From positions 1-64,000 of IMG/VR virus record IMGVR_UViG_3300044731_002337: a DNA stretch of 64,000 nucleotides; one strand, written 5' to 3'. The first letter of the stretch is position 1. The number at the start of each line of letters is the position of its first letter. Under the pieces are notes generated by a model that worked only from the letters and a program-made list of their open reading frames with translations, ran no database searches and was not told where the DNA came from. This document shows positions 24,075 to 51,814 of this stretch, in pieces. The translations under genes and the position numbers were made by a program.

Positions 24075-25023
24075 ATGGCTTCTGAGGAAATGACTGGTTT
24101 GCTTTCTTTACCATGTGATGGAGTTCATCATAAGGAGGATGTGTTACGCAATGTGCCGTCTGACGTGTATTTGGACATGGATGACATTAAGGGGTATATG
24201 GAGGGTGAAACACGTGAGTGGCCGTGCAAGGAATGTCTCTGCGCCATGATTGAGCGATTACATCCGTAAGTAGAGATTATTGGTATGTGTATTCACTTGG
24301 CATGGTTAGGCGTGATGAGAAATATCGAAACATGTTTTTCTATGAGCGTTGGCTTTCTGGGATATTCCATCAGATCAAATTTTTGAATTTTAGTATGAAG
24401 CAAATGTATCAAAGCTTTGTGAACCGTGGAGACATTTACTTGACATACGATGTACGAAAAAAGCTTGCGAATGGAATAGGATCAAAACTCTGTGGTGACA
24501 AGCATGTACCCGAGAAGACGATGCTACTACAACGACTTGATATGCCGCCTGAAGACATTCGTGATGACAACAAGTGCAAGGAATGTCTCGAGTACTTTTT
24601 CAAGGAAAATCTCACGTAAGAATAGTTTTTTTTTTATTTCCTATTGATACCATGATTTATGGTAGATCATGGGCCTTGTTGCAACAGTATTGTGAGGAGG
24701 GTCGATTTGCGATGGCGGTCAAGTTGGTATCGTTTACACCAAGCAATCGATTGAAGCTGAACCAATTTCCAACGAGTGTACTCAATGTTCCACATGAAGC
24801 GATGGCGAATTCTGCTTTTCACCAGATTCGGTGGCTGATCCTTCATGGGAAACATCTTGGTATTCATGATTGTGAGTTTTGCAAGACTGAAGCCAGCATC
24901 AATTATGATCCGGACAATGAGGAGGATGAGGAGGAGGAAGAAGAAGAAGAAGAAAAAAGTTGCCTAGGAAAGAGAAAACATGAAGACGTGTTTCCATGCA
25001 TGGATGTTGTGAGTAATAAATAG
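24075..25023 (+). CDS. Spliced three-exon Cys/His (putative Zn-binding) module protein, join(24075..24265,24310..24615,24666..25023), 284 aa
   Basis: Introns of 44 nt (GTAAGT..TTAG) and 50 nt (GTAAGA..GTAG), both phase 2, restore one frame across three ORF-track fragments. Confidence 0.85.
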
Positions 25024-25047
25024 ATAATAAGAAAACGACTTGCTCTC

Positions 25048-26454
25048 ATGTCTTTTTTTGGTAAGCATTCTCCACTTAGGGTTACATGTTATGATAAACC
25101 AGTACAAATGGAGGATATGGTATCCAAAGAGGATAGTGTATTATTGCAACGTTTTTTTAGTCGATATGGGCAAGAAAGTTTTGAGGAGGAAAGGTTAAGT
25201 TTGGAGCGACTCGATTCGTATTTGGATATTCCATTAGTGCAAGTTGTGTTTACTCCATGTTATGAAGCATTACGCCGGGTAGTAGAGTTGGTGGATGGAG
25301 ATTTTATTCGTGTCATTGGATTAACGCATGGACAGGATAGTAAACAACAACAGCCGCCAGTTGAGGTGGAGGGACAAATGAAATGCTATGAGAAATTGTT
25401 TACAGAAGAGATATTGTTAGAGGCGATTGAAAAGGGAGATATGGATGTTGTGGATTTGGTGTGGAAATTAGGGTACGCGTATGATATCCAAGCATTTTAT
25501 TACACTGCTGTATCACATAAGCACGAAATGATAGCAGAGTATTTACTGGAACATGATGCACCTTTAGATCATGATGTGTTGCTGCATACGATACAAATGG
25601 GGTATCTCAAGTGTGTACAAACCATCTATTTACGAAACTCTAATTTATTTGATGACAAGTGTATGTTGACGGCAGTAACGTATAATCAGATAGCCATGAT
25701 GGATTTTGTGTATCAGATAGTTCCAGAAGTGGATATGGAATGTTTTTCGGTGGCTGTAAAAGAGGGCTTCGTAGAGGTATTGCGAAAATTATGTACCTGG
25801 AAAACTGTGAATGTATATGATATGAGAGACTTACAAAATGAGGCGATCATGTACGGGCATGTACCCATCATTGACTACTTATTGCAATTTGGGTCACATT
25901 TTATGTTACATTCATTAAACGTGGCCGCATGTCATAACGATCTAGATATGGTGCGGTTTATGTATTCTAAAGGAGTTCGACTATATCTTCATACCCATTT
26001 TTTGAGGGATCTCATGTCAAAGCCCAACTGTTTGGATGTATTGAGGGTTATTCATGAAGAGTATCATGAGCCATTAACAGAGGGAGTACTAGATGCGGCA
26101 ATACGATATTCCACGGTCGATGTTGTAAAGTTTGTACATGAAAGTGGTGTACCATTAACCTCATCATTATGGATGGAATTTCTTCAAACGTTTGACAGAG
26201 ATAATACTCATTTTTATGAATATTTGTTTGATAAGGCTTGTCCATGGCCAATTGAACTGTTTGTGGAGAAAGCATGTATCTGTGGTAGGTTATCATTGGT
26301 GAAATTTGCGATCAAACATCAGTGCCCTTATAGTCTGAACACGTGTATTGAACTGTGTAAGCGACATAAACGAAAAAAAGTGCTTGATTTTCTCTTGTCA
26401 TTATGTCCAAATTCAGGGAATATGCTTCGAAAGAGGCTATACCGAACCTGTTAA
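25048..26454 (+). CDS. Ankyrin-repeat protein with shared N-terminal YLDIP domain
   Basis: FGKHSPL..LERLDSYLDIPLV; ankyrin-like helical repeats, CPW; basic C-terminus. Confidence 0.85.
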   Translation: MSFFGKHSPLRVTCYDKPVQMEDMVSKEDSVLLQRFFSRYGQESFEEERLSLERLDSYLDIPLVQVVFTPCYEALRRVVELVDGDFIRVIGLTHGQDSKQQQPPVEVEGQMKCYEKLFTEEILLEAIEKGDMDVVDLVWKLGYAYDIQAFYYTAVSHKHEMIAEYLLEHDAPLDHDVLLHTIQMGYLKCVQTIYLRNSNLFDDKCMLTAVTYNQIAMMDFVYQIVPEVDMECFSVAVKEGFVEVLRKLCTWKTVNVYDMRDLQNEAIMYGHVPIIDYLLQFGSHFMLHSLNVAACHNDLDMVRFMYSKGVRLYLHTHFLRDLMSKPNCLDVLRVIHEEYHEPLTEGVLDAAIRYSTVDVVKFVHESGVPLTSSLWMEFLQTFDRDNTHFYEYLFDKACPWPIELFVEKACICGRLSLVKFAIKHQCPYSLNTCIELCKRHKRKKVLDFLLSLCPNSGNMLRKRLYRTC

Positions 26455-26597
26455 CCTTCTAAACTGCCAGGGGTAATGAGAAATGGTGCAATGCAGAACT
26501 TATTATTCCGTAATAAAATCTGGCGGTCATCATGGATGTCGACATTAGGAGAATCTTCCGATACATAACAACATGCGATGATCTTGAGTGAAAAACT

Positions 26598-27995
26598 ATG
26601 GAGGAGGAAATGTTATCTTATTTTGGAAACTTGTCGCCACTACATATTCAATGTGAAGACGAATCAGTTACACTTTCGGAGTTGATACAGAGTAATGAGG
26701 AAGCATTGTTGAGGGATTTTTTGAAGAATTATCAAACAAAGGATTTCAGTGCATGTAGAGCTGAGTTGGAGCATCTGGATAAGTTTTTGGACATTCCATT
26801 GGTAGAAGCTTATTTTCAACCGAGTCATGTATCTTTGCAGCGTATGGCGACCCATCACTATGGTCACAAAGTCATGCCAACTTGCGGTAACAAAGTCATT
26901 ATCCCGGAAGATTGTTTTACGGAGGACATATTGACAAATGCGATTAAGATGGGGTATGTGGAGTCGGTACAGGCTGTACATGACTATGGTTACGTCTTTG
27001 ATAATGGATTATTTCTGGAATTGGCATTGGAAAAACCTCACGAGTCAGTGGCGACATTTATGATGGGGTGTGATGGAGTTGTAATTTCGGAAAGGGCGGT
27101 AACTTTAGTCATCGAGCATGGTCTAATGCAATGTGTAACTCAATTCCCATTCGACTTTGTGTTTACAAGTGATCATTTTCGCAGTGCTGTGAAGAGTAAT
27201 CAATTGGGCATGATTGATTTCTTTCATCAACGGAACATACCGATAGGAATTCATTTGTATATGTGGATTTGCCCCGATTTACGAACAGTCATTCATATGC
27301 TAGGGTTGGGATATGAAATCAGTATTGGAGATATTGCTCGAAGTGTTCATTTCAAGAAAATAGAATTGTTACGATACATGCATGAAAAGAAGGTGTTCAA
27401 TGTGTTGGTGCATGAGATTTATCAAGCAGCAGTTCACTCTGGAGAGATAGACATTGTGAAATATTTGGTGGACATTGGTGGAACATTTCAGCCGGAGCAT
27501 ATGCGTGATGCGTTAAACTCAAACAATATTGCCATTGTGGAGTTTCTATTGGACCAACATGTGTCAATACCGCAATTAAATGGAATATTTCGGATGAAGC
27601 ATCTAATGCTAAGGTTACTACACTCAAGGGGCTATGTGTTTTCCGAACAAATGTATCAGTTTACTATGCGAGAAGGGACTGTTGAAGCAGTTCAAGTCAT
27701 GGTGGAAAATGGTTATCAGCTGACATCGAAAGTATGGGCTCTTGTGATCTATGGTAATTCGAGGGATATACTTAGGATTCTTCAATTTTTGGTGGATCAA
27801 AAATGTCCTTGGGATCCTGATGTATGTCTATATGCTATTAACAAGCGAGCATTGGATATTTTTCAATTTGTAATTGAACATGGTTGCCCTTATAGCATGG
27901 CAACATGTAAAATCTTAGCCCACGATCATCCCGAAATAATGGTCTACTTATCATCCCTCCAATCACAAAAGTTACGACTTCGCAAACGAAAATAA
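26598..27995 (+). CDS. Ankyrin-repeat protein with shared N-terminal YLDIP domain
   Basis: FGNLSPL..LEHLDKFLDIPLV; KCPWDP, EHGCPY; C-terminal LRLRKRK. Confidence 0.85.
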   Translation: MEEEMLSYFGNLSPLHIQCEDESVTLSELIQSNEEALLRDFLKNYQTKDFSACRAELEHLDKFLDIPLVEAYFQPSHVSLQRMATHHYGHKVMPTCGNKVIIPEDCFTEDILTNAIKMGYVESVQAVHDYGYVFDNGLFLELALEKPHESVATFMMGCDGVVISERAVTLVIEHGLMQCVTQFPFDFVFTSDHFRSAVKSNQLGMIDFFHQRNIPIGIHLYMWICPDLRTVIHMLGLGYEISIGDIARSVHFKKIELLRYMHEKKVFNVLVHEIYQAAVHSGEIDIVKYLVDIGGTFQPEHMRDALNSNNIAIVEFLLDQHVSIPQLNGIFRMKHLMLRLLHSRGYVFSEQMYQFTMREGTVEAVQVMVENGYQLTSKVWALVIYGNSRDILRILQFLVDQKCPWDPDVCLYAINKRALDIFQFVIEHGCPYSMATCKILAHDHPEIMVYLSSLQSQKLRLRKRK

Positions 27996-28005
27996 ATTAG
28001 AAATG

Positions 28006-28019
28006 TTTGGATTTTCTGC
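28006..28019 (+). promoter_or_regulatory. Variant promoter motif TTTGGATTTTCTGC
   Basis: One mismatch to consensus, 37 nt upstream of in-frame ATG 28056. Confidence 0.45.
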
Positions 28020-28055
28020 GTGGATCTATTGGTAATTTTTTGTATTTTGTGGGCA

Positions 28056-28499
28056 ATGTTTTTTCTACTTTCTAATAAGGGATCTTCGTCAAAGCCAAGA
28101 GCAAACCAGGCCAATTTAATTCGTCATGTAAGGTGGAAAGGTTTTGATATGAACAAGACATTGGAGTTATTACCATTTGAAATGAATGGGGAAGTAAGAC
28201 ACAGTATTTTCAAGATTGTGGCATTGGAGAATTGCTCATCGTCACATGTGCATGCCAAGGACATAATACTAGAACGTTTGGGATTATCCATGACACCAGA
28301 ATTGATCATGGAATTTTTGGAAAACAATGCCCATCCATGTGAAGGATGTGTTGAGTACATGATCTTGATGTTACGAGATCCAGAGACATGTTATTCCATT
28401 TTTTTGGAACATGGACATGAAGAGGCGGCTTTACGAACATTACATATCCATCAATGTGATGTAAAGCCTTCCTCATTTGAAAGGATTTTTCAGTCATAA
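28056..28499 (+). CDS. Intronless member of the Cys/His module family
   Basis: CSSSHVHAKDIILERL..PCEGCVEYMILMLRDP aligns with exon modules of 24075 and 44196 genes. Confidence 0.7.
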   Translation: MFFLLSNKGSSSKPRANQANLIRHVRWKGFDMNKTLELLPFEMNGEVRHSIFKIVALENCSSSHVHAKDIILERLGLSMTPELIMEFLENNAHPCEGCVEYMILMLRDPETCYSIFLEHGHEEAALRTLHIHQCDVKPSSFERIFQS

Positions 28500-28506
28500 A
28501 ACATGT

Positions 28507-29373
28507 TTATTTTTCTATGATGAGTGATAATTTAAGTATGGAACGTAGAACATCACGGGTGTATAATGGATGACAAGTAAAAGGGTTTGGTTGACGATTA
28601 AATACGAGAAAGGGTATCCATCCACAATAACTTGAGAAATGACGAATGAAATGAATGGATTCTTGTAGTTTTTCCTTGACTACATTTTCTAATGGGGACA
28701 TAAACTGCAATTAAAGTTGGATAAATAATAAAAATAATAATAATACCATGTTTTCTACATTTTTGAATTCGAGTCTTGGTGAAGCTCCCATAGAGAGAAG
28801 GGTATTGACGTATTTTCGTGACATGGGATCTCTAATCGCTAGTTCAAGTGGCGTTCCATCCAGAGAGGGGCAATTCAAGTCCATGTTCGGTATTTGTAAG
28901 GCGATTGGAACCAATGCATAGAATTTGGAAAAAAGTGCGGTAGTTAACAGGTTATGTCCCTAATGTAACTAAGTTTTGGTTGTTCATCAGTATAAATTTA
29001 CCATGTAGCCTTTGAGATGTGGGTTGGCGTTGTAATGTAGAAGTAGGTGAATGATAGAGAGACGTGTAGTAATAAACTCTGGATATCGACTGGTTAGGTT
29101 GGCAGCAAGTAAAAGTGGAGTTAGTTGTCGAGTATCCTTGGCGTCGACATTTGCATTATGAGATAGTAATTCCGTAACTGTATGGAGATGATTGGTAATG
29201 ACAGCAGCATGTAAAGGTGTTCTTTGAAGGTTTGTGCCAGGAGGTTCAAATATTCCAACATGCATTTGATCATTCCATTGGATACATTGATCATTGGTAA
29301 AATTCACATTGGCACCCAAATGGAGGAAATGGGTGATTGATTCTCCTTTCGCAATGTTCAAATATAGATCCAT
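28507..29373 (-). CDS. Spliced ankyrin-repeat protein, complement(join(28507..28704,28747..28959,29002..29373)), 260 aa
   Basis: Two 42-nt phase-0 GT..AG introns; TPLHAA, TPLLLAA, GTPLELA ankyrin motifs; C-terminal HPLYTRDVLRSILKLS. Confidence 0.85.
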
Positions 29374-29418
29374 GACAATATATACAGGTTATTTATGTAA
29401 AGTAGTACATCGGATTAT

Positions 29419-30120
29419 TTATTGTTCATCGAGAATGAGATGACGTTTGTCTGGACCGGGAATAAGTTTGGTAATGTCTGGTGTGTTGGGTGGACATTTA
29501 TTGTCACAGCAGATGAGAAGAGTGGATTTGCGACGAAGATGGTTATGTATACGTTTGACAAAGTCAATACATGACCATTGTTGTTCAGGAGTGAGAGTAG
29601 GTAGAAACCAATAGACTTGTACTTGTCGAGAGTATTCCGCAAATTGTGTGGCACCATGTTCAAGCTGACTATCGTTAACTTTGGTAAGGGAAATAGTTAG
29701 GTGATGAACGTGAATGTATTTCATCATGGTGATAAATCGTATCCACTGTATGGTTCGATCCCAAGAAAGGTACCAAATACCAGGCGTTGGCTCTCGTATC
29801 AGGGTCATGAACTGCTGTTGCCATGGTTGGGGTTTCTCAATGTAGCCCGCCAAATCATGGAAACAATACATGGGCATATTAGGACTTGTATAAGGGCCTT
29901 CAATACATATCTTTTGAGTAGTGAGCGGCATAAAGTAACGACATGCATATTCGTCTGTACGTCTAGTATTCCATGATAGATTATGACGTGTTCCAGCATA
30001 GACAACTCGAATATCATTTGCTTCCACTTGATATATCCACATCGCTGTGTTTGACTCCAACCATTGCCGTATCATCTTATGAGACGAATCCTTGTGAAGA
30101 TGACAAGTATAATAATACAT
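29419..30120 (-). CDS. Hypothetical protein resembling a degenerate CRESS-virus (nano-like) Rep
   Basis: Ordered similarity: YYYTCH (motif I), WLESNTAMWIYQVE, IEGPYT, PWQQQF, LLICCDNKCP; HUH, catalytic YxxK and Walker A not intact. Confidence 0.45.
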   Translation of the reverse strand: MYYYTCHLHKDSSHKMIRQWLESNTAMWIYQVEANDIRVVYAGTRHNLSWNTRRTDEYACRYFMPLTTQKICIEGPYTSPNMPMYCFHDLAGYIEKPQPWQQQFMTLIREPTPGIWYLSWDRTIQWIRFITMMKYIHVHHLTISLTKVNDSQLEHGATQFAEYSRQVQVYWFLPTLTPEQQWSCIDFVKRIHNHLRRKSTLLICCDNKCPPNTPDITKLIPGPDKRHLILDEQ

Positions 30121-30178
30121 TCTTATGATACAATAATTTGTATGAATGAAAAGTATACAAATCGGATTATTATTATTA

Positions 30179-30811
30179 TTATTTATATGAAGAGAGTTTC
30201 ATAATGGATCGAAGAATATCTCTTGTATACAATGGATGTTCAATCTTTTTGCTCCATATCAATAATGGTATGCATAACTCTTCTGTCATGACTTGTTTCT
30301 GTAGATAAATAAATGAGGATAAATACACACATTAATATATACCATGAGAGCAATAGTGGAATGACAGGAATAATTTTGAGCAACATCTAAAGGGGTTTTG
30401 TGCTGTATTAAAACCAAAAAGAAAAGAAAGATTATGGGATGATGAGGTGACAATGTTACATTATGTGGGGTGGTTGAAAATGGGTTGGCTTTGTAATGTA
30501 GGAGACGTTTGATGATGTCGATGTGACCCATACTGCATGCATCATGTAATACGGTATATCCATCCATATAGCTGGAATGAACATTCGCCTTGTGTTCAAG
30601 TAATATGTCGACGCAAAGTACAGAGTTATACCGAACAGCTACTCGTAACGAACCATCATCTGGCTGAAATGATTTTGTAATGATTTATTTTTATTCAATA
30701 TGAATGTACCTTGATTCCTTGGTTAAGTAGAGCAAATAGAGTATATATATTATTGGTGCGTGCAGCATAGTGCAATAATGTTTCTCCTGGTTGTTGTTGT
30801 TGTTGGTTCAT
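30179..30811 (-). CDS. Spliced ankyrin-repeat protein, complement(join(30179..30298,30343..30402,30460..30663,30710..30811)), 161 aa
   Basis: Three phase-0 introns of 46, 57 and 44 nt; GETLLHYAA, GYTVLHDAC, KTPLDVA; C-terminal HPLYTRDILRSIMKLS shared with 28507 gene. Confidence 0.85.
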
Positions 30812-30834
30812 TTTTTGGGAAAGAAAAGAGTTAT

Positions 30835-31326: not shown

Positions 31327-31341
31327 GTTGTGTGATGGGGA

Positions 31342-32820: not shown

Positions 32821-32854
32821 TTTATTGTTGTAGAGTTTTTTCTTGTGCTTGTGT

Positions 32855-33286: not shown

Positions 33287-33315
33287 ATTACTTATCGGAA
33301 AAAACAAAGAGGTAA

Positions 33316-34171: not shown

Positions 34172-34229
34172 GTAGATTTTTTTTTGGAATTCATAAACTA
34201 GAAAAAGAAAAAAAAACAGTAGAGTGATC

Positions 34230-35249: not shown

Positions 35250-35285
35250 AAAAAAAAGAAAGATAGATAGAAAGAAAAAACAAAA

Positions 35286-39690: not shown

Positions 39691-39704
39691 AAAATTTTCA
39701 AAAG

Positions 39705-39777
39705 TACACAAGACGAGACTCGAACTCGTGACTTTTGGCTCATAAGACCAACACTCTACCAACTGAGCTACTTGTGT
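39705..39777 (-). tRNA. tRNA-Ile (anticodon UAU), intronless
   Basis: 73-nt cloverleaf: acceptor ACACAAG/CTTGTGT, TAGCTCAGTTGGTAGA, anticodon arm TTGGT-CTTATGA-GCCAA, GTTCGAGTC; T-runs downstream. Confidence 0.95.
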
Positions 39778-40768: not shown

Positions 40769-41584
40769 GTGGAAAAAATCAAAATGTGGTTAACACTTGC
40801 TCATGTCTACGGTATTTTACTTATGCCAAATCAATGGATTAGTTTTGTAGTGGTACTACTGAATGCATGGATGATTAGGACCCCCTATTTGTGTTTTGTA
40901 AATTGTGTGTTGAATATGGTTGGTAACATGTCATGGTGCGGTGTAGTATTTTCAATGCTATGGTTATTGGATTCTCAAAATTTGGTCATTGGTGAGTTAC
41001 CTGGGAAATTTAGAAAAGAGGTCGAATACATTGTAAGTGTAAGTAAAGATTTGAAACCAGATAATTCAGAGATTTTTTGGACGAGTGTATTTGCAGATAA
41101 TGGTCAGACAACCAATATTCCTTACTCTCAAGGGCTATATGATTACATATCTGGTTTACGGTGGCAAATCATGGAGTTTTGGTGTAAGCGAATTAATGGG
41201 TTTGGTACGCTCATCAATCCATCCAATTCAGTAGAACAAGATTGGCATATTGATTATACATGGTCATACACAAGTCTATTTATACCCATTGAAAATTGTA
41301 CATCATCCAACATGACTCAGATTATGACAAGTTCAATTGTATGGGGATATTTCCATAATTCACGTAATATCAAAGAAAAAGAACAAGAGAATGTTATGGC
41401 CACCATCATTGTACCAAGGAAATGGTCATTGTTGTTATTGCCACCAAGTACATTTCACCGTGGCGTAAAGAACAACTCTGATATGGATCGAACATTGTTT
41501 TGGATATCCTATCAGAGTCGAACCGATCCAATCGAACATGAACATGCAGTGCAAGACTTTACCAAGAAATCAATAGACTTGTGA
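40769..41584 (+). CDS. Membrane-anchored 2OG-Fe(II) dioxygenase-like (PhyH-like) protein
   Basis: QDWHID (HxD), FHRGVKNNSDMDRT (distal His and Arg); hydrophobic N-terminus. Confidence 0.6.
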   Translation: MEKIKMWLTLAHVYGILLMPNQWISFVVVLLNAWMIRTPYLCFVNCVLNMVGNMSWCGVVFSMLWLLDSQNLVIGELPGKFRKEVEYIVSVSKDLKPDNSEIFWTSVFADNGQTTNIPYSQGLYDYISGLRWQIMEFWCKRINGFGTLINPSNSVEQDWHIDYTWSYTSLFIPIENCTSSNMTQIMTSSIVWGYFHNSRNIKEKEQENVMATIIVPRKWSLLLLPPSTFHRGVKNNSDMDRTLFWISYQSRTDPIEHEHAVQDFTKKSIDL

Positions 41585-41675: not shown

Positions 41676-41700
41676 GTAAAAAGGTCATGATGAAAATATT

Positions 41701-42501
41701 TTATTTTTCAATAGGAAAAAAAATAGGCATTACAATTTTTGCTTTCACTGAAGGACAAGAACGAGGTTGCGGGGTTGGTTTTCTTTGTTTCTTGAGTGGG
41801 GCTAGTGAAAAATCAGAAGAGGAGTTGTCTTGCCTTGATCTTTTTCTTGGTAAGGCATAGAATAGAGCAGTTTCACCATTCTTGTTTCGAAGGTTCACAT
41901 CGGCCCCATAGTTAACCAGAAACTTGATTCCAATTCCCGAGTTTTTCTCAGAAGCACACATGAGAAGAGAACAGCCATCATTCTTGTCCGAGACTGAATT
42001 GATATCGCACTTGGCCGTCTTGATCAACCAATCAAACATGTCCACATCCATTGAGTGAAAATTATGATTCATCACTTTGAAAAAAACAGCAAACAAGATG
42101 AAATAACCCAATTCGTTTTCTTGGGTCAGCACCTCAGGCTTCTTCACAATCAACTCCTTCAACTCATAGTATTGCCCTTGTGCAAGCAACTCAAATGGAT
42201 CGGTAACCTCAGTTTCATTCAAAGAGGTAACTTTTGATTCATTCGAAGAGGTAACTTCTGGTTCAATCGAAGAGGTAACTTCTGGTTCAATCGAAGAGGT
42301 AACTTTTGGTTCAATCGAAGAGGTAACTTCTGGTTTAATCGAAGAGGTAACTTTTGGTTCAATCGAAGAGGTAACTTTTGGTTCAATCGAAGAGGTAACT
42401 TTTGGTTCAATCGAAGAGGTAACTTCTGGTTCATTCGAAGAGGTAACTTTTGGTTCAATCGAAGAGGTAACTTCTGGTTCATTCGAAGAGGTGGTAGACA
42501 T
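41701..42501 (-). CDS. Ankyrin-repeat protein with N-terminal (VTSSI/NEP[E/K])x12 repeat tract
   Basis: GCSLLMCAS..LVNYGADVNLRNKNGETALFYA. Confidence 0.8.
   Translation of the reverse strand: MSTTSSNEPEVTSSIEPKVTSSNEPEVTSSIEPKVTSSIEPKVTSSIEPKVTSSIKPEVTSSIEPKVTSSIEPEVTSSIEPEVTSSNESKVTSLNETEVTDPFELLAQGQYYELKELIVKKPEVLTQENELGYFILFAVFFKVMNHNFHSMDVDMFDWLIKTAKCDINSVSDKNDGCSLLMCASEKNSGIGIKFLVNYGADVNLRNKNGETALFYALPRKRSRQDNSSSDFSLAPLKKQRKPTPQPRSCPSVKAKIVMPIFFPIEK
42202..42493 (-). repeat. Tandem array, 24-bp unit x12, core family 1, in frame
   Basis: 24-nt periodicity with variant units. Confidence 0.97.
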
Positions 42502-42541
42502 GGTTGCAAATGTGTATTTTTGAAAAACCTAGCCCGGCGTA

Positions 42542-42555
42542 GCGGAAAATCCAAA
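42542..42555 (-). promoter_or_regulatory. Putative promoter motif TTTGGATTTTCCGC
   Basis: 41 nt upstream of ATG 42501. Confidence 0.6.
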
Positions 42556-42591
42556 AAAAAAACAAATTTCCGAAACGAACCTATAAAATAA

Positions 42592-43221: not shown

Positions 43222-43225
43222 GTTT

Positions 43226-44196
43226 TTATTCTAGTTGAATTGGATGATTCTTGTTGTGGTTGCAAAATCGACATGCATTATTCTTCATGGTAATAGGAAC
43301 ACGACGTCTCAACGCATTCAAGAGTTTGTGGAAGTCAGAGTTTTCTTCCTCCTTGTGTTTCACGTCTAGATCTGATTCCTTCAGAGTCACCTTACGAATC
43401 CGAAACAACCTTGATGCCCAGTTGAACCTTCCATGACAGACCAAAAATCGGAATTCCAGTGTTGGGCTAGATAACCATGAGTTGTACCAAAAAAAAACAC
43501 AAACTTACTCTAAAACGTTTTCCATAATGTGTTGAATGCAGTCGAGACACCTGAGTTGTGGGCTGATATGGGTTGGATACATTTCCAAAAGTTCAAACAT
43601 GTCCGACTTGGATTTAGAATGTTTGATTCCGCATGCATGGGTACAGACTCGTTCAAATAGAAAACGTCTTTCCTTTTGCGTCTTGTAGGCTGAACATGCC
43701 AAGTACTTGCGGTGCAATGTCTTGATGTTGAAATCGTTCCTGGCCGCGTATTGAAGTAATTCCCTCTTTTGTGGCTCTTGTGTGAACCATTCCTTGATCC
43801 CAGTATCACTAGCCAAAAATGAGAATGATTACATACAATGTAAAATTACGGGTCAAGAACTTTGATGAGGTACTTCATGCACACTTGGCATGGCGATTCC
43901 GTGTCTTCCAAATAGGCAGCAATCATGTCATTTTCTACGTAGACATTCATTTTGCGAATCAATTCAACCTTGGGGTGAGATTCGCCGTCACATGGAGCAG
44001 CAACAAGGCGTTCAAGAAATTCAACTTTTTCGTCATTGCGCAGGTCGTGCTCCAAACTTCGGTAGACTCGGTTCGCTTCCTTCACGTCCTCAACTGTTTC
44101 CAAAGGATTCTGTTGCAAGTCCGGTTCCAAAAGTTCTAATCCAGCAGCTATTTCCCTATGAAGTTCATTTGTTTTGGCAATCATTTGCGAGTCCAT
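43226..44196 (-). CDS. Spliced three-exon Cys/His module protein, complement(join(43226..43466,43509..43808,43850..44196)), 295 aa; paralogue of 24075
   Basis: Phase-2 introns of 41 nt (GTAATT..CTAG) and 42 nt (GTAAGT..CTAG) at positions equivalent to those in the 24075 gene. Confidence 0.85.
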
Positions 44197-44231
44197 GGTT
44201 TTGTAATGTGATGAAATGGTGAAAAGTCCCA

Positions 44232-44245
44232 GCGGAAAATCCAAA
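44232..44245 (-). promoter_or_regulatory. Putative promoter motif TTTGGATTTTCCGC
   Basis: 36 nt upstream of ATG 44196. Confidence 0.6.
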
Positions 44246-44527
44246 AAAAAAAGTTTATTCCGATTCCAAATGTTGTTATTTGTTCAGATCTCATGTGTCT
44301 CACATCACCATTTTTATTCCCCTATTATCGACATGAAGAACCTTTTTTATTCCAATTGAAAATACTTCTTGCCAAATAAAATACTTTTTCATCACAAGAA
44401 GAACATTTTTATTCCAACAGAAAACACTTTTTACCTCTTTTGCAAAATAAAAAACTTTTTCTGATAATTGAAAACTTTTTCGTCTCTTTTATCAACATGG
44501 AAAGCGTTTGATAATTAGGAGTTTGTA

Positions 44528-44702
44528 GTTCATTCGAAGAGGTAACTTCTTGTTCATTCGAAGAGGTAACTTCTTGTTCATTCGAAGAGGTAACTTCTTG
44601 TTCATTCGAAGAGGTAACTTCTGGTTCATTCGAAGAGGTAACTTCTGGTTCATTCGAAGAGGTAACTTCTGGTTCATTCGAAGAGGTAACTTCTTGTTCA
44701 TT
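44528..44702 (-). repeat. Tandem array, 24-bp unit GAAGTTACCTCTTCGAATGAAC(A/C)A x7, core family 1, probably non-coding
   Basis: 24-nt periodicity in a ~500-bp divergent intergenic region. Confidence 0.97.
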
Positions 44703-44739
44703 TGGAAAATAAATCAAGTCGACGAAAATAAAAATATAC

Positions 44740-45015
44740 ATGGGTAATAAAGAGCAAAAATCGTATGCCTTGGTTGAGGAGATAACGGAAGAGTTGGATC
44801 CTACCCATGTACAGTTTATGTGTAAGGAGATTGTTGGCTACAAGGTGGAAAATAGATATCATGTAGTAATAGAGTGGTCGGATGGAGATCATACAGCATA
44901 TGATATAGAGGTGCTGAATTCGATTTTTGATCAATTATCCAAAAAGACAAGAGAAGGATTTATGGCGTGGAATTTATTACAATTATCCATATTGTTTACT
45001 ATGGCGTATATTTAA
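44740..45015 (+). CDS. Hypothetical protein
   Basis: 91-aa ORF with A-rich ATG context. Confidence 0.6.
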   Translation: MGNKEQKSYALVEEITEELDPTHVQFMCKEIVGYKVENRYHVVIEWSDGDHTAYDIEVLNSIFDQLSKKTREGFMAWNLLQLSILFTMAYI

Positions 45016-45620: not shown

Positions 45621-45631
45621 ATGATATTGTT

Positions 45632-48600
45632 TTATTTTAGTTTAATCGTTTTTTGATCTTCTTCAAGTGCTGGAGCTATTTGATTTTCATAAGGTTGGCG
45701 ACCACTATTACCAGATACAAGTTCCCCATTAACTTCATGTGAAATAATGGATACATAATCGACTAGACGTACATTGAGACCATGTCCATATTTACTGTGA
45801 GCCCAATTGATGGCTTTAATAATGTCTGATATTGAGTTACCAAAAGCACCACCTCCCACAAGTGTTAACCATAAATCCTTGGCCTTGAGAGCATGTGCAG
45901 CCAAATAAGTAGATGCATACGCTGCTTGAAGAAGAAAGTAAGCCTTTTCATTACCATTTTCGTGGGTTTTATTATATTGTCCAGAAGTACCTTGGAACAT
46001 GTTTGCTGCGGCTACAAATACTTGATGAACTGGGAATGAAGTAGATAACAGTTGAATTTGTTCATTGTTTGGGGCCCCATAATAAACCATTGCATTTTCA
46101 TTGTATAAAACACGTACAAGACCAAGTAAATCTGTGTATTCGGTCGTATCTTCTGGTGGTAATAATTGGAGTTTCCCACCTGGTAATTTAGTACGTTTAT
46201 CTTCAAACTGTTGTTTATATTCTTCACCTCGTTGTGGAAATGTGTTGGGGTCAAGCTCTTTAGGTACGTTGTCAATGTCATTAATGTCATATTTTACATA
46301 TCCGTTATCTACATTGAAATAGTCAGATAGACCCTCGAGGTAGTTAAGGTCACCTAAAGCTTTATTATCTTCCGTCTGTGATTTTCTTTTGTTGTATTCG
46401 TTTTTAGGTAAGTTATGAAGGCGCCCAATAGCATCTACTGGTGCCATAATACTACAAAACGGACCTTGTGTTTTATCATTTGCATAATTCAATAAGAATT
46501 TGTTATAATCTGCTCGAATAAAATCAACAGGGCATTCAAGCCCATTAAATTGACTTGCGGCTTGAAATACATGTCCTTGATGTTTAGGATCAGTCATGAT
46601 TTCCCATATATTTCCTAAATTATCTCCGGAATGTATTCGAATCTGTAAAAGTGGCTGTGATGTATCTATGGATGATGATACTCTATATAGTAGATCCTGA
46701 ATTGATTCATAATGTGCCTGTCCACCTTGTAGTTGTGAACCATTTTCACAAATAAGGTAATTTCCTTTAAACTTACCAAATAACTCTTGTTCAGTATCAT
46801 AGCCCGAAATATGTTTAACCCAATCGACTCGTCTTATTGGATCTCCCGTGAACTTGTCTTTTGGTTTGTTATCCTCTACTTTGTGGGTAATGGGTCCTCC
46901 AGGTTGGGGACTAATTAAATGTTTATGATTTTCAGAACTCTGGGTAGCTTCAACCCTAGACGTCCGTGATTGGGTGCTTGGTTTAGTAGTTATACCATAA
47001 TTTCCTTGTTTTATGGATTCGATGTATAACCCAAATCGATTATCTCCGGTGCGTTTCTTTCGTAAATCAACACTCTCCTCATCTTTCGAATAGTCATACC
47101 TTTTAGATATTTCATATTCTTCTTGTGTCAATGGCGTTATAAGTAATTCTTTCCATTGAACTCCTAATTCGTATGAGGTTTGGCTTGTATCTCCCACAAA
47201 TAACTTATGGCGACTAAAATCTGAATGTCCTGTGTGTGACAGTTTACACACGTAATCATGTTTATAATAAATGTTAAAGTATATCGTGTTCAAATCTCTA
47301 GTCTTATATAGTTTAAATGTGTCTTTCCATAATGTAGCATGGGTATCGAGAAATGGTATAATACCTGGTTTTTCTTTATTCCCTATTAACTTGCTATAGT
47401 ATTGATTAACATCATTAAAACGTTCATTTCGAATCCAATACTTGCATGTGTCATAGTGTAACATGATGTAGTATGCCTTGTTGAATGAAACAAAATATTC
47501 GCCACGTACACCTGTAACCCATGGTGGGAAATCACATTTTTTATCTTTATGGGTTTTTTCACCCGATCTCAAATCAATGACTTGGTAGTAGAGTAACATC
47601 TCAATAAGTAAGTCTGGTGTCATGTAGTAACTATTTTTTGAGTTTTCGAACCTATATATGCATGCTTTAGTATATTTCCATTCCTTTTTCATGATGTTTT
47701 TTACAGCATTATCATAATTTTTTTCTATGTTTGTTGTATAACTTATTAAACCATCTTTTTGCATGATGTCAGTAGTAAAATGTTTGTCCCAGTCAAATTC
47801 TTCTTTTCCTTGCGGACTAGTATTGGAATGTGGAGGATTTTTCTTAGGTTTTATCTTGGTCATGGTTTGTGGTGCTGGTGTTTGACAATACAACAGAATA
47901 CGTCGATCACCAGTGACATATGGATCTGGTTTGTAATTGTTTACATCATTTCTTAACTTTGTGTTTTGGTGAATATCTTCTTCGGTTATTGGCGTGTCCA
48001 GTAATTGTCTCCATTTAACTCCTAATTGGTATGAAGTTTTCATAGGATGTGTACCTTCCACATAAAGCGTATGGTCTTTGAAAATTTCGTTACCGGTATG
48101 ACGTAGCTGAGCGATGAGTAAATGATTAGGATATATTTTCACATATATTTCTTTCAATGAGTGACTGTTTGTTTTTTGAATTGTATCTTCCCACAGTTTT
48201 GCATGGGTATCGACAAATGGTATATGACCTGGTTGTTTGTTGTTCCCTATTAACTGGTTATAATATCGATTAACATCATCAAAACGTTCATTCCGAATCC
48301 AATACTTGTTTTTGTCATAGTGCACCATTACATAAATTGCCAAGTTGCGATATTCGTACATGCCTTCTGGGATTTTTAATTGTTCGTCTGTATGGGTTTT
48401 TTCACCCGATCTCAAATCAATGACTTGGTAGTAGAGTAACATCTCAATAAGTAAGTCTGGTGTCATGAAGTAACTATTTTTTGATTTTTCGAACCTATAT
48501 ATGCATGCTGGATTATAATTCCATTCCTCCACCATGATTTTATCTACAGCATTATCATAATTTTTTTCTATGTTTGTTGTATAACTTATTAAACCCTTGT

Positions 48601-48802
48601 CTTCCATTATATCAGTAGTAAAATGTTTGGTCCAGTCGAATTCTTCTTTTCCTTGCGGACTAGTATTGGAATGTCCATGATGTATCTCAGATGTATCATT
48701 CACTTCCGTAATCGTCTTTGATTGTACATTGGATGTTATAAGTAGGGTACATAGGTAAAGGAGTATAAATACTAAGGCGATAGCAAATAATGTATTATCC
48801 AT
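45632..48802 (-). CDS. Membrane-anchored protein with duplicated ~280-aa domain and C-terminal macrodomain/PARG-like domain
   Basis: N-terminal TM; 843-bp internal duplication; FQAASQFNGLE..DKTQGP..LTLVGGGAFGN. Confidence 0.6.
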   Translation of the reverse strand: MDNTLFAIALVFILLYLCTLLITSNVQSKTITEVNDTSEIHHGHSNTSPQGKEEFDWTKHFTTDIMEDKGLISYTTNIEKNYDNAVDKIMVEEWNYNPACIYRFEKSKNSYFMTPDLLIEMLLYYQVIDLRSGEKTHTDEQLKIPEGMYEYRNLAIYVMVHYDKNKYWIRNERFDDVNRYYNQLIGNNKQPGHIPFVDTHAKLWEDTIQKTNSHSLKEIYVKIYPNHLLIAQLRHTGNEIFKDHTLYVEGTHPMKTSYQLGVKWRQLLDTPITEEDIHQNTKLRNDVNNYKPDPYVTGDRRILLYCQTPAPQTMTKIKPKKNPPHSNTSPQGKEEFDWDKHFTTDIMQKDGLISYTTNIEKNYDNAVKNIMKKEWKYTKACIYRFENSKNSYYMTPDLLIEMLLYYQVIDLRSGEKTHKDKKCDFPPWVTGVRGEYFVSFNKAYYIMLHYDTCKYWIRNERFNDVNQYYSKLIGNKEKPGIIPFLDTHATLWKDTFKLYKTRDLNTIYFNIYYKHDYVCKLSHTGHSDFSRHKLFVGDTSQTSYELGVQWKELLITPLTQEEYEISKRYDYSKDEESVDLRKKRTGDNRFGLYIESIKQGNYGITTKPSTQSRTSRVEATQSSENHKHLISPQPGGPITHKVEDNKPKDKFTGDPIRRVDWVKHISGYDTEQELFGKFKGNYLICENGSQLQGGQAHYESIQDLLYRVSSSIDTSQPLLQIRIHSGDNLGNIWEIMTDPKHQGHVFQAASQFNGLECPVDFIRADYNKFLLNYANDKTQGPFCSIMAPVDAIGRLHNLPKNEYNKRKSQTEDNKALGDLNYLEGLSDYFNVDNGYVKYDINDIDNVPKELDPNTFPQRGEEYKQQFEDKRTKLPGGKLQLLPPEDTTEYTDLLGLVRVLYNENAMVYYGAPNNEQIQLLSTSFPVHQVFVAAANMFQGTSGQYNKTHENGNEKAYFLLQAAYASTYLAAHALKAKDLWLTLVGGGAFGNSISDIIKAINWAHSKYGHGLNVRLVDYVSIISHEVNGELVSGNSGRQPYENQIAPALEEDQKTIKLK

Positions 48803-48853
48803 GGGTTTTTTTTTCTTGGTTTGAGGAAAATAAAGTAGATAAGGAAAAAGATA

Positions 48854-49786
48854 ATGATGGAGGATGAGATGTGTGCGGGCTTTACAAAGAAGGGAACGAG
48901 GTGCGCTAAGAAGAGACGTAAATATTCTTTATTTTGTGTATTGCATCGTCAAATGGGTGAATGGAGTTCCTTGAAAGACAATGTATGTACCTTGACTCAG
49001 TTTCTAAGGAATAATGAAAAGTTACAACCACATTATGAGGTTAAGGAAAGAATAGCGTATGGAATGTCAGGACACATATTCGAGGCAGTTCACAAGGCGA
49101 GTCAATTAGCGGTAGTCATGAAGGTTGTAATAGGTCAACCAAAGATAGACGAAGTAAGCATTGTAAAGAGGTTTCATCCAAAAAAAGACAATCATTTAGT
49201 TCACTTGATTGATTCATTTGTGGATTTAACTTACAGTGATGAGCATAACATTCAACAGAGTGCAACAATATTGGTGTTGGAAAAGCTTCACAAGACGATT
49301 ATACATTATACCTATACGCCTGAGATAAGGGGGCAATTGATTTGTATGATGCAGCAGTTACATGGACATGGTATTGTATCGAATGATGTGAAATTGGAGA
49401 ATATCATGATGGATGAGGTGCGAAGAAGGGTTGTGTTGATTGACTTGGCATCAGCTATAGATGTGAATCAATGGGAAGGGCATTATCAATCAAGAGTTGC
49501 AGGGAATATGATCTATAAGAGTTTGGGTCTAATGTGTAATAGTGATAAAAAACCAACATACGCAGATGATTTGGAATCACTGGCCTATGTGATGTGGGAA
49601 TTACAAGTAGGAGCTGTTCCATGGGAAAAGGAATCCTTAGTTGAAAAAATGATTGAAAAGAAGAAGAAACTACCTAAATGTCCTCCTTTATTACTTCAAC
49701 TCATTTCTTATTGCCGTTCACTCGGGTCAGAATTACCTGATTATGAGAAAGTTAAACATATTTTTTTGTTTTGCGAGAGGGAATGA
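48854..49786 (+). CDS. Casein kinase 1/VRK-like Ser/Thr kinase
   Basis: GMSGHIF, VVMK, NDVKLENIMM, LIDLA, DDLESLAYVM..PW. Confidence 0.88.
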   Translation: MMEDEMCAGFTKKGTRCAKKRRKYSLFCVLHRQMGEWSSLKDNVCTLTQFLRNNEKLQPHYEVKERIAYGMSGHIFEAVHKASQLAVVMKVVIGQPKIDEVSIVKRFHPKKDNHLVHLIDSFVDLTYSDEHNIQQSATILVLEKLHKTIIHYTYTPEIRGQLICMMQQLHGHGIVSNDVKLENIMMDEVRRRVVLIDLASAIDVNQWEGHYQSRVAGNMIYKSLGLMCNSDKKPTYADDLESLAYVMWELQVGAVPWEKESLVEKMIEKKKKLPKCPPLLLQLISYCRSLGSELPDYEKVKHIFLFCERE

Positions 49787-49811
49787 GCCGTAAAATAAAA
49801 AGCAAGCAGTT

Positions 49812-50051
49812 ATGGATTTGATATTTACGTGTCCACATTGTGAGGATTATATTATTGTAGGTGAGAAGGATGTGAATTGTGGTATTTTTCGTCATGGAGC
49901 AAATCCGGATGGAAGTCATATAAGTCCACATTTGTCTATGGAAGAATGTGAACGATTACGTGCAGTACCAAATCATCAAGGATGTGTAAAGCCTTTTCGT
50001 ATTGTGTCTACTAACCCTGGATATCGCATTGAAGTATGTGATTATGTGTAA
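49812..50051 (+). CDS. Small Cys/His protein of a type common in giant viruses
   Basis: CPHC..NCGIFRHG..PH..CE.L..GCVKPFRI. Confidence 0.75.
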   Translation: MDLIFTCPHCEDYIIVGEKDVNCGIFRHGANPDGSHISPHLSMEECERLRAVPNHQGCVKPFRIVSTNPGYRIEVCDYV

Positions 50052-50068
50052 GAAATAAAGGGAGAAAA

Positions 50069-51208
50069 ATGGAAAACGTAATTCATTGTGCTACAGGTAA
50101 AGTGGAGGTGTATAAAGATTATGTGTTGAAATATAGTAACGCAGCCTATGTAGATGATTTTTTAACTGAATGTATGGTCATGCTAAATTCCAATCATCAT
50201 CCACATTTGGGTGAGATTTTAGAATTGTCGCATAATGGGGATTCGTATACGATGAAAATGCCTCGATATGCAAAGGTATTATTTGAGTCGATGGAGTTAA
50301 CGTTCCAAGTGGTATGGGATGTAGTGTCAGCATTGGTATATATGCATGAAGAGTTGGATATGGTACATTTGGATATTCATGATGCGAATATTTGCATTAC
50401 TGAACAAGGGCGTGGTGTATTGATTGATTATGGTCATGCGAATAGTAGGGAGGTAAACGATATGGGGGGCATGTATGTCATATCATTCCGTCCACCAGAA
50501 ATGTATCCACCTTCTTTTGATCAAGGATATAGTACATCAGATATATGGGCATTAGGTATGATGTGGCTCGAATATATGGGAATTTATGTAGTCACTACCA
50601 TATTACCCATTTTGTATCAGCATCTCAAATCCAATTGCACCTCTTCTTGTTTCCGCAAAAAATCATGGGGCAAGTTGATCGACAAGGCGGTGAAAACGTC
50701 TCCAACTCGTGGCAAGGGTGATTTTGGATGGGTGATTTATGAATTGTACAAGGATAAAGAAGAAATGTATTTAGAGTTTTTGGATAGAGTGATTGATCAA
50801 CATTCAAGTGATGTGAGAGAAGTATATTACGAGGTCATCCGACATATGATTCGATATGATGTTGGCATACGATTCACATCAAGGCAATTATTTGAATGTT
50901 TACGGGCGTTTAAGAATACACATCAATTTGAGTGTCACGAACCTGTGTTATATGTAAAACCTGATGAACGAGATAGGATAGAATGTGACTTGACACCAGA
51001 GCAAATGTGTATCATGTCAGCAGTGAGACATGAGCGAGCAGATAAGCCGTTTATGAGTCATTTTATTCGATTAGGGTTATTAACGGCGGAGAATGGTCGA
51101 CAATACTTGGCAGCTTATATGGCGTTAAAAGGACGTAAATCAGAATTCATTAATAAGTCATGTGTCATTAACGTGATACTACATTGGTTTGCCAAAGGAT
51201 TGGAATAA
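50069..51208 (+). CDS. Ser/Thr protein kinase
   Basis: HLDIHDANI, LIDYG, FRPPE, SDIWALG. Confidence 0.88.
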   Translation: MENVIHCATGKVEVYKDYVLKYSNAAYVDDFLTECMVMLNSNHHPHLGEILELSHNGDSYTMKMPRYAKVLFESMELTFQVVWDVVSALVYMHEELDMVHLDIHDANICITEQGRGVLIDYGHANSREVNDMGGMYVISFRPPEMYPPSFDQGYSTSDIWALGMMWLEYMGIYVVTTILPILYQHLKSNCTSSCFRKKSWGKLIDKAVKTSPTRGKGDFGWVIYELYKDKEEMYLEFLDRVIDQHSSDVREVYYEVIRHMIRYDVGIRFTSRQLFECLRAFKNTHQFECHEPVLYVKPDERDRIECDLTPEQMCIMSAVRHERADKPFMSHFIRLGLLTAENGRQYLAAYMALKGRKSEFINKSCVINVILHWFAKGLE

Positions 51209-51254
51209 GATTTTTCTCCGACTGAACCATAATAAATCAGAGTGTTATTGACAA

Positions 51255-51814
51255 ATGGATGTGTGTAAGTTTTATGCGGTCAAGAGTGAATTGGAAAGTG
51301 TGGTGACGGATTGGGAAGCGATAAGGCGGATTCTTGTAAGGTCACCTTTAGCTGAAACGATTTGGAAGAAACAATTGTTTTTGGGGGCAATAAGGACGTG
51401 TTGTGATCATTCTGTCACTCAATATGAAGTCATGCCTTTATTGGCTACTCATATTACGGAAGAAGAGTTTGAATCCATTACTAGCACTTGTCCTTGGTGT
51501 TTCAAAATGGCAATTCAATGGCTATATGAGTAAGTTGTTGTGGAAAAAAAACATAGAAATGATTCTAATTTTTTTTTTTATGAAATAGACCTGAAAGAGT
51601 ATTGGAGAGTATGATTACAAAAGAACGTTATGACTTGGCATTGCTCATCTTGAAGCATACGACATTTCACTTGGATTGTCACTTTGTCATGACGCATTTT
51701 CAAAAACATCCTTATCCCAATAAGCAAGGGCTATTAGTATTGCATCAATGTATATTACGTTTCAAGATTCCAGAAGAAGAGGAAGAGGAAGAGGAGGAGG
51801 AGGAAGAAGAATGA
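51255..51814 (+). CDS. Spliced two-exon Cys/His module protein, join(51255..51529,51589..51814), 166 aa
   Basis: 59-nt phase-2 intron GTAAGT..CTAAT..ATAG; exon 2 PERVLESMITKERYDLAL matches exon 3 of the 24075 and 44196 genes. Confidence 0.8.

What the first reader, a model, noticed from the sequence alone, without database searches (positions are those of the whole stretch)
24075..51814. Paralogue family with exon-sized Cys/His modules and a stop codon built into each splice donor
Genes 24075 (+), 44196 (-) and 51255 (+) have phase-2 introns at equivalent positions (LHP|RDE vs LDP|DTG; NLT|SW vs VLD|PT vs LYE|PE). All five donors read xxG|TAA: the intron GT overlaps an in-frame TAA. An unspliced transcript would give a clean single-module protein and a spliced one a two- or three-module protein. 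Modules look like C-x(3-5)-H...C-x2-C metal-binding units. This could be a splicing-dependent switch of protein architecture, or a record of exon shuffling. GTAA donors naturally give TAA in phase 2, so the stop may be incidental.
Basis: partly seen in the sequence, partly recalled or inferred. Interest (0 to 1): 0.8.

Follow-up and report, generated by a model that had tools for sequence, protein, structure and literature searches.

The report
Spliced modular gene family in lake giant virus
An uncultured lake giant virus carries a small orphan gene family in which each short intron sits at the end of a repeated Cys/His helical module; the introns look real, but the stop codon "built into" each splice donor is an arithmetical by-product of one inherited intron position, not evidence for a switch.

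Summary
Genes A (24075-25023 +), B (44196-43226 -) and C (51255-51814 +) are paralogues. They are split by five 41-59 nt GTAA..TAG introns, all phase 2, so every donor reads xxG|TAA.

I add four lines of evidence:
- A fourth, intronless paralogue D (28056-28499) reads straight through the junction.
- An orthologue of A from another sample (L119, 32% identity) keeps both introns at the same codon and phase, with different intron lengths.
- The intron always splits the 10th codon after the module's CxxC (the 11th once).
- The only two indels seen in strain variants fall inside A's introns.

The introns are therefore very probably genuine spliceosomal introns, copied along with their module.

The "switch" reading is not supported. 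Any GTAA donor in phase 2 gives TAA, and the seven introns are copies of one ancestral position. Other introns in the same genome are phase 0 or 1 and carry no stop at the donor; these are in DHFR-TS, ankyrin and RNase H genes.

No RNA run was listed, so intron retention could not be measured.

The module is an all-alpha unit with invariant C..H..CxxC. It matches no Pfam family, PDB sequence or known fold. In 1.84 billion representative proteins it was found only in this virus and one relative.

This is a new member of a known kind: spliceosomal introns in a nucleus-dependent giant virus.

The parts
24075..24265 (+). Gene A exon 1 (module 1, 64 aa; C14..H18/19..C51xxC54)
   Evidence: The ATG lies 45 nt after the T-run+GATTTTCCG motif.
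24266..24309 (+). Gene A intron 1, 44 nt, phase 2, GTAAGT..TTAG
   Evidence: Conserved in position and phase in orthologue L119. A strain variant has a 1-nt deletion at 24306.
24310..24615 (+). Gene A exon 2 (module 2, 306 nt, symmetric 2-2)
   Evidence: The AF2 model has five helices, pLDDT 79.6.
24616..24665 (+). Gene A intron 2, 50 nt, phase 2, GTAAGA..GTAG
   Evidence: A strain variant has a +T insertion behind 24625 and T>C at 24658.
24666..25023 (+). Gene A exon 3 (degenerate terminal module plus poly-Glu tail)
   Evidence: GRFAMAVKLV matches GRFDMVLKLL in L119.
43850..44196 (-). Gene B exon 1 (module 1)
43809..43849 (-). Gene B intron 1, 41 nt, phase 2, GTAATT..CTAG
43509..43808 (-). 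Gene B exon 2 (module 2, 300 nt, symmetric 2-2)
43467..43508 (-). Gene B intron 2, 42 nt, phase 2, GTAAGT..CTAG
43226..43466 (-). Gene B exon 3 (degenerate terminal module)
   Evidence: D aligns across the B2|B3 junction.
51255..51529 (+). Gene C exon 1 (module)
51530..51588 (+). Gene C intron, 59 nt, phase 2, GTAAGT..ATAG
51589..51814 (+). Gene C exon 2 (terminal module plus poly-Glu tail)
28056..28499 (+). Gene D, a fourth and intronless paralogue. It reads ...CEGCVEYMILMLRD-PETCYS... through the intron position.
   Evidence: HMM E=8.6e-7; sequence. It aligns through the B1|B2 and B2|B3 junctions.
24011..24029 (+). T-run + GATTTTCCG promoter-like motif upstream of A
   Evidence: 8 sites in the window against 0.48 expected. 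The same motif lies upstream of the L119 orthologue.
44233..44252 (-). The same motif upstream of B
28010..28018 (+). Variant motif GATTTTCTG upstream of D

Best explanation
The window is the first 64 kb of a 295-kb giant-virus contig from lake water. This virus appears to depend on the host nucleus for mRNA processing.

Genes A, B, C and D form a lineage-specific family built from a repeated all-alpha module of about 50-100 aa. Four residues are invariant (C, H, CxxC); I infer that they hold a zinc ion.

In A, B and C each full module is one exon. It is followed by a short (41-59 nt) AT-rich GTAA..TAG intron that splits the 10th codon after CxxC in phase 2. I infer that these are ordinary U2-type spliceosomal introns, removed constitutively to give 3-, 3- and 2-module proteins. 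I also infer that the arrays arose by duplication of module-plus-intron units (symmetric 2-2 exons), followed by gene duplication. D either lost the intron or never had it.

The in-frame TAA at every donor is a by-product of GTAA in phase 2, inherited with the intron. Its only likely effect is that an unspliced transcript is truncated at once and probably discarded.

Shown: exon-intron geometry, paralogy, conservation in an orthologue, the intronless paralogue, and other introns in the genome.
Inferred: actual splicing, zinc binding, and a protein-protein interaction role in the nucleus (acidic poly-Glu tails).
For: - The reading frame is restored across all five GT..AG intervals, giving collinear paralogues.
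- Intronless D is continuous through the junction: LRD-PET against VLD|PTL and LYE|PER.
- Orthologue L119 is 32% identical over 197 aa spanning both junctions. It has introns at the same codons and in the same phase, but of 46 and 41 nt against 44 and 50 nt.
- The intron is in the 10th codon after CxxC in 6 of 7 cases.
- Intron GC is 0.27 against 0.42 for the exons.
- The only two indels in variant contigs lie inside A's introns.
- The same genome has introns of the same size and style in conserved genes. In DHFR-TS the Pfam thymidylate synthase profile runs 1-78 | 79-104 | 108-266 across two introns of phase 0 and phase 1. One ankyrin repeat is split by a phase-0 intron. The two halves of RNase H flank a phase-1 intron.
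- AATAAA lies at 29 of 52 gene ends, against a 5% background. That fits nuclear 3' processing.
- There are no group I/II or other Rfam hits.
- Spliceosomal introns are already documented in pandoraviruses, some chloroviruses, endogenous giant viruses and mirusviruses (PMC12768974).
Against: - There is no transcript evidence: no RNA run was listed.
- The host and the viral lineage are unknown.
- Branch-point assignment (yTnAy such as CTCAT, TTGAT, CTAAT) is by eye only.
- Zinc binding and function are inferred from four conserved residues and a medium-confidence model, with no structural neighbours.
- The family was detected in only two viruses, so comparative power is small.
- The indel argument rests on two events (p about 0.06).
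Confidence: 0.8

Rival explanations
1. Regulated intron retention is a real switch. Early or late in infection the unspliced mRNA is exported, and the donor-embedded TAA yields a stable single-module protein (64, 116 or 92 aa). Spliced mRNA yields the multi-module form.
For: - The stop follows the module's last residue in all 7 introns, including the non-consensus donor GTAATT.
- A one-module protein can exist on its own, as gene D shows.
- The exons coincide with a predicted self-contained helical unit.
- Many nuclear viruses export unspliced RNAs (general knowledge).
Against: - The TAA is forced by GTAA in phase 2.
- All copies descend from one position, so there is no independent recurrence.
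- Other introns in the same genome have no stop at the donor.
- Module number is already varied by paralogues.
- No RNA data are available.
- In short-intron eukaryotes, stops on retention generally serve decay rather than isoform production (PMC2911113 and PMC5014332, listed by title and abstract only, not read).
Confidence: 0.07
2. There is no splicing. The pieces are independent small ORFs or decayed gene fragments, or the breaks are assembly errors.
For: Gene callers in public data treated the pieces as separate ORFs (P0001-P0005, P0007). A's intron 1 contains an ATG in frame with exon 2.
Against: - That in-frame start is not conserved. L119 has GTG there, and B has no ATG.
- Every break has GTAA..TAG ends.
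- Frame offsets differ between introns (3n, 3n+1 and 3n+2), yet the exon frames are kept in the orthologue.
- D is continuous.
- Contigs from other lake-water runs laid on this region match it without differences (X4, X5); runs X1-X3 hold 90-100% of its sampled words.
Confidence: 0.04
3. The family, introns included, was captured recently from the eukaryotic host genome. The contig region may even be host-derived or an endogenised element rather than part of a free virus.
For: The introns are canonical and eukaryote-like. The family is confined to a 28-kb stretch near the contig end. AATAAA signals are frequent.
Against: - No cellular homologue was found in 1.84 billion representative proteins or in the 5.8-billion-cluster index.
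- A, B and the L119 orthologue carry the same viral promoter-like motif as unrelated neighbouring genes.
- Introns also occur in other genes across the contig.
Confidence: 0.1

Closest known systems
Spliceosomal introns of nucleus-dependent giant viruses (pandoraviruses, some chloroviruses, endogenous giant viruses, mirusviruses; PMC12768974, PMC5995976)
   Same: Short canonical GT-AG introns inside viral protein genes. They imply processing by the host spliceosome, occur in only a minority of genes, and include lineage-specific genes.
   Different: Here the introns are shorter (41-59 nt, against a peak near 80 nt in mirusviruses). One family has an intron per repeated module at an identical codon. 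The viral lineage is unassigned. No RNA support is available.
Tandem exon duplication of symmetric exons in eukaryotic modular proteins (general knowledge)
   Same: One module equals one exon. Flanking introns share a phase, exon lengths are multiples of three, and module number varies between paralogues.
   Different: It occurs in a viral genome, and in phase 2-2 rather than the 1-1 class that dominates classical exon shuffling. The array is tiny (2-3 units).
Premature stop on retention of short introns, coupled to mRNA surveillance (Yarrowia PMC2911113 and ciliates PMC5014332, both known here only from the titles and abstracts listed)
   Same: A retained short intron gives an early in-frame stop.
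   Different: In those systems it is a genome-wide statistical property. Here the immediate TAA is limited to one family and follows from its phase.
Helical zinc-binding modules such as TAZ-type HCCC fingers (recalled from memory; a lead only)
   Same: An all-alpha unit whose Cys/His ligands lie in a loop and at a helix N-terminus.
   Different: No sequence or fold match was found. Ligand order and spacing differ. Membership is not claimed.

Membership tests
U2-type spliceosomal introns | GT at the 5' end and AG at the 3' end | tested here: met
   5 of 5 in the window and 2 of 2 in L119 are GTAA[G/T]...TAG.
U2-type spliceosomal introns | Removal restores one continuous, homologous reading frame | tested here: met
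   Spliced A and B are collinear. L119 aligns across both junctions. Intronless D is continuous.
U2-type spliceosomal introns | Position and phase conserved between orthologues while intron sequence and length drift | tested here: met
   A against L119: same codons, phase 2; 44/50 nt against 46/41 nt.
U2-type spliceosomal introns | Branch-point motif and pyrimidine tract upstream of the acceptor | tested here: inconclusive
   yTnAy-like CTCAT, TTGAT or CTAAT lies 10-20 nt from the TAG, and most introns have T-runs. This was judged by eye, without statistics.
U2-type spliceosomal introns | Spliced junctions seen in RNA | not testable with these tools
   No RNA run was listed for gene A. The single read-laying run was used on DNA contigs.
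Self-splicing group I / group II introns | Conserved catalytic RNA structure, hundreds of nt long | tested here: not met
   The introns are 41-59 nt. Rfam at gathering threshold finds only a tRNA in the window.
Known zinc-finger or other Pfam domain families | Significant profile match | tested here: not met
   No Pfam hit better than E=0.02 for any of 9 pieces. The best PDB sequence-profile hit has E=0.57. Foldseek finds nothing below E=1 against PDB or BFVD.
Programmed intron-retention isoform switch | Both spliced and unspliced mRNAs accumulate and are translated, with regulated ratios | not testable with these tools
   No RNA or proteome data are available. Sequence alone shows only that retention would stop translation at the donor.
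Giant virus (Nucleocytoviricota-like) genome | Dense genes on both strands, expanded ankyrin and kinase families, viral DNA-metabolism genes, shared promoter motif | tested here: inconclusive
   Present: ankyrin, protein kinases, RING, UDG, RNA ligase, SNF2 helicase, DHFR-TS, RNase H, a weak D5-like DUF5906 hit and one tRNA. The contig is filed in IMG/VR. No capsid or polymerase hallmark lay in the roughly 95 kb I could read, so the phylum is not settled.

The most novel reading that the evidence does not exclude
The donor-embedded TAA is exploited. The virus times or tunes splicing so that one gene gives either a single helical Cys/His module or a 2-3-module protein. In parallel, symmetric 2-2 exons allow in-frame exon skipping. 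That would make this a viral, spliceosome-driven architecture switch built by exon duplication inside a virus genome.
Probability: 0.07. Interest if true: 0.7.

Novelty: new member of a known kind. Interest (0 to 1): 0.42.

Why it matters
It adds a freshwater giant virus to the short list of large DNA viruses whose genes need the host spliceosome. The introns lie in a core metabolic gene (DHFR-TS), in ankyrin genes and in an orphan family. Gene ends carry AATAAA signals, which points to a nucleus-dependent life cycle.

The family is a clean small example of module-plus-intron duplication happening inside a viral genome. It is also a practical warning: prokaryote-style gene calling on such viruses reports exons as separate small ORFs. 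Public protein sets hold A, B and C only as fragments.

The donor-stop "switch" idea should not be carried forward without RNA data.

Tried and rejected
- RNA evidence: no RNA run was listed for gene A. DNA contigs from four runs were sparse and gave only a few variants.
- Wider homologues: two metagenome scans and five viral-contig scans with family queries found only the source contig. The word-index protein search found only P0007 and the window's own piece.
- P0006, a 990-aa repeat protein from the profile search, looks like a low-complexity false hit.
- The first promoter-motif scan of viral contigs returned mostly chance hits. A longer pattern did recover four further pieces of the same contig.
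- Function: Pfam, PDB sequence, Foldseek against PDB and BFVD, and the ESM Atlas (only sub-0.9 helical-repeat leads such as clathrin/VPS/TPR) gave no assignment.
- Lineage: a UDG Atlas search and an SNF2 helicase search gave no taxon. They did show relatives at 57-71% identity on contigs up to 130 kb.
- Rejected by length and by Rfam or by frame logic: group I/II introns, frameshifting or readthrough (intron lengths are 3n, 3n+1 and 3n+2), and assembly error.
- A candidate intron joining ORF 49812-50051 to the kinase (50048-50136) was rejected. The kinase has its own ATG and the interval lacks a TAG acceptor context.
Full report
**Where the window comes from**

The window equals positions 1-64000 of IMGVR_UViG_3300044731_002337, a 294,773-bp contig. 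DNA runs that hold it are lake-water metagenomes.

Genes are dense on both strands. They encode many ankyrin-repeat proteins and protein kinases, a RING protein, an RNA ligase, UDG, a GNAT acetyltransferase, two 2000-aa DUF3638 proteins and one tRNA-Ile. Other pieces of the same contig carry an SNF2 helicase, DHFR-TS, RNase H, a divergent tubulin and more kinases.

This is giant-virus-like content. No capsid or polymerase gene lay in the roughly 95 kb I could read, so I leave the phylum open.

**Checking the observation**

I rebuilt the three gene models from the sequence.
- A: exons 24075-24265, 24310-24615, 24666-25023 (284 aa).
- B (minus strand): exons 44196-43850, 43808-43509, 43466-43226 (295 aa).
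- C: exons 51255-51529, 51589-51814 (166 aa).

The five introns are 44, 50, 41, 42 and 59 nt. They have 27% GC against 42% in the exons. They begin GTAAG or GTAAT and end TAG.

The exons are collinear paralogues: A1~B1 E=8e-9, A2~B2 E=4e-8, A3~C2 E=8e-6, A3~B3 E=7e-3. The full modules share invariant C, H and CxxC residues. The terminal exons are degenerate copies of the same module.

**New evidence that the introns are real**

- A profile of the module core, run against all 1012 stop-to-stop ORFs of the window, found one more member: gene D at 28056-28499 (E=8.6e-7).
  - D has no intron. It reads ...CEGCVEYMILMLRD-PETCYS... through the point where B has VLD|PTL and C has LYE|PER.
  - D aligns without a gap across the B1|B2 and B2|B3 junctions.
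- A profile search of 1.84 billion representative proteins returned only the window's own fragments, one low-complexity false hit, and P0007.
  - P0007 lies on a 1520-bp contig from another sample (L119). That contig holds an orthologue of A, 32% identical over 197 aa spanning both junctions.
  - It has the same promoter-like motif upstream. It has two introns at the same codons, both phase 2, GTAAGT..TAG and GTAAGC..TAG. Their lengths are 46 and 41 nt, against 44 and 50 nt in A.
  - Exon frames are kept while intron lengths drift by non-multiples of three. That is the signature of spliced introns.
- In contigs of strain variants laid on 23300-29000, the only two indels were a 1-nt deletion at 24306 and a T insertion behind 24625. 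Both are inside A's introns. Given what those contigs covered, this is weak on its own (p about 0.06).
- Rfam finds no structured RNA here apart from the tRNA.

**Splicing in the rest of the genome**

On L133 (same contig), DHFR-TS is split twice.
- Intron 4049-4106: 58 nt, GTATTA..CTAG, phase 0.
- Intron 4249-4294: 46 nt, GTAAAA..ATAG, phase 1.
- The Pfam thymidylate synthase profile is matched at 1-78, 79-104 and 108-266 by the three exons.

Other introns:
- In the window, ankyrin gene 30805-30286 (minus strand) has a 46-nt phase-0 intron (30709-30664) that splits an ankyrin repeat.
- Ankyrin gene 29373-28507 has two probable phase-0 introns.
- An RNase H gene on L134 has its two halves on either side of a 55-nt phase-1 intron.

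All of these are 42-58 nt, AT-rich, and have the form GTA..YAG.

AATAAA lies within -6 to +45 of the stop codon in 29 of 52 genes, against 5% of random windows. The stop is often inside GAATAAA. Together these features point to a virus whose mRNAs are made and processed in the host nucleus.

**What the donor stop means**

A GTAA donor in phase 2 must read TAA.

The question is then whether five (with L119, seven) such introns are independent. They are not. The intron splits the 10th codon after CxxC in six cases and the 11th in one. That includes both positions within A, B and L119. So the module and its intron were duplicated together, and the whole gene was then duplicated.

The middle exons are symmetric 2-2 and 306, 300 and 294 nt long. 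That is what tandem exon duplication requires.

None of the eight other introns or candidates in this genome is phase 2, and none has a stop at the donor. The DHFR-TS introns read on for 15 and 5 codons. So there is no genome-wide design of "stop in the donor". There is one inherited intron position.

The family already offers 1-, 2- and 3-module proteins as separate genes.

I therefore read the TAA as incidental. Its likely consequence is only that unspliced RNA is truncated early, as in other short-intron systems. The two papers I cite for that (PMC2911113, PMC5014332) I know only from the titles and abstracts listed. No RNA run was listed, so regulated retention is untested rather than excluded. 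I give it about 7%.

**What the proteins are**

Exon 2 of A, modelled with the eight available module sequences, gives a five-helix unit (pLDDT 79.6, pTM 0.67).
- C61 and H65 lie in the loop before helix 4.
- C89 and C92 lie at the start of helix 5.

That arrangement is compatible with one zinc site, but I could not inspect the model's coordinates.

No Pfam family, PDB sequence or fold in PDB or BFVD matches. The ESM Atlas gives only weak helical-repeat leads.

A, C and the L119 orthologue end in poly-Glu tails. A, B and the orthologue share the T-run+GATTTTCCG motif with unrelated neighbours. There are 8 sites in the window against 0.48 expected.

My working guess, with low confidence, is a zinc-stabilised helical protein-binding scaffold that acts in the host nucleus.

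**Comparison and novelty**

Spliceosomal introns are documented in pandoraviruses, a few chloroviruses, endogenous giant viruses and, abundantly, mirusviruses (PMC12768974; PMC5995976, listed).

This case is a new member of that kind. Its notable details are very short introns, one intron per repeated module at an identical codon, an intronless paralogue, and an orphan family seen in only two viruses.

The "switch" is not.

**Limits**

- There is no RNA or protein evidence.
- Host and lineage are unknown.
- The branch site was judged by eye.
- Only about a third of the contig was readable.
- Public gene calls miss short exons, so "found in only two viruses" is a soft statement.

Noticed in passing
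L133:3275-4773 (same contig, outside the window): The bifunctional DHFR-TS gene is split by two short introns: 4049-4106 (phase 0) and 4249-4294 (phase 1). The Pfam TS profile is contiguous across the three exons.
   Followed up: yes
window 30286-30805 (-) and 28507-29373 (-): Two ankyrin genes have phase-0 introns. 30709-30664 is supported by a split ankyrin repeat. 29001-28960 and 28746-28705 are probable only. The 28746 intron starts GTATTATTATTATT, like DHFR-TS intron 1.
   Followed up: partly
window 23399-23924 (-): This gene lies downstream of a GATTTTCCG motif and has two overlapping reading frames. A 58-nt GTTGGC..GTAG interval (23842-23785, phase 1, containing CTAAC) would join them into one protein with a poly-Glu tail. 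It could equally be a frameshift.
   Followed up: partly
whole window, gene 3' ends: AATAAA lies within -6 to +45 of the stop codon in 29 of 52 genes (background 5%). The stop is often embedded in GAATAAA. This looks like a eukaryote-type polyadenylation signal.
   Followed up: yes
window 23964, 24021, 39678, 40118, 42543, 44233, 51827, 51859; L119:670-680: A T-run + GATTTTCCG(C) motif lies about 35-90 nt upstream of start codons. There are 8 sites against 0.48 expected. It is conserved upstream of the orthologue in another virus, and two sites form a divergent pair at 23964/24021. It is probably a promoter class, and it resembles E2F/ETS-type host sites (from memory only).
   Followed up: partly
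whole window: The + strand has G>C skew of about +0.15 to +0.22 whether genes are on + or -. This is a strand asymmetry unrelated to transcription, possibly replication-related. The window is one end of the contig.
   Followed up: partly
L133:7440-8612: A divergent 390-aa tubulin (Tubulin GTPase domain E=4e-43 plus Tubulin_C) is encoded by the same viral contig.
   Followed up: no
L134:1367-1970: The two halves of RNase H lie on either side of a 55-nt phase-1 GTAAAA..GTAG intron (1674-1728). A further candidate phase-0 intron lies at L134:3821-3870.
   Followed up: partly
window 39704-39777 (-): tRNA-Ile (anticodon TAT) lies between two small genes.
   Followed up: yes
window 44409-44741 (-); also after genes at 111-632, 40784-41584, 41701-42501: There are 30-nt tandem repeats (GAACCAGAAGTTACCTCTTCGAAT-like) inside a small ORF. 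Related TTCATTCGAAGAGGTAAC repeats occur at several gene ends.
   Followed up: no
window 10034-16027 and 16046-22060 (-): A tandem pair of about 2000-aa paralogues with weak DUF3638/DUF3645 matches.
   Followed up: no
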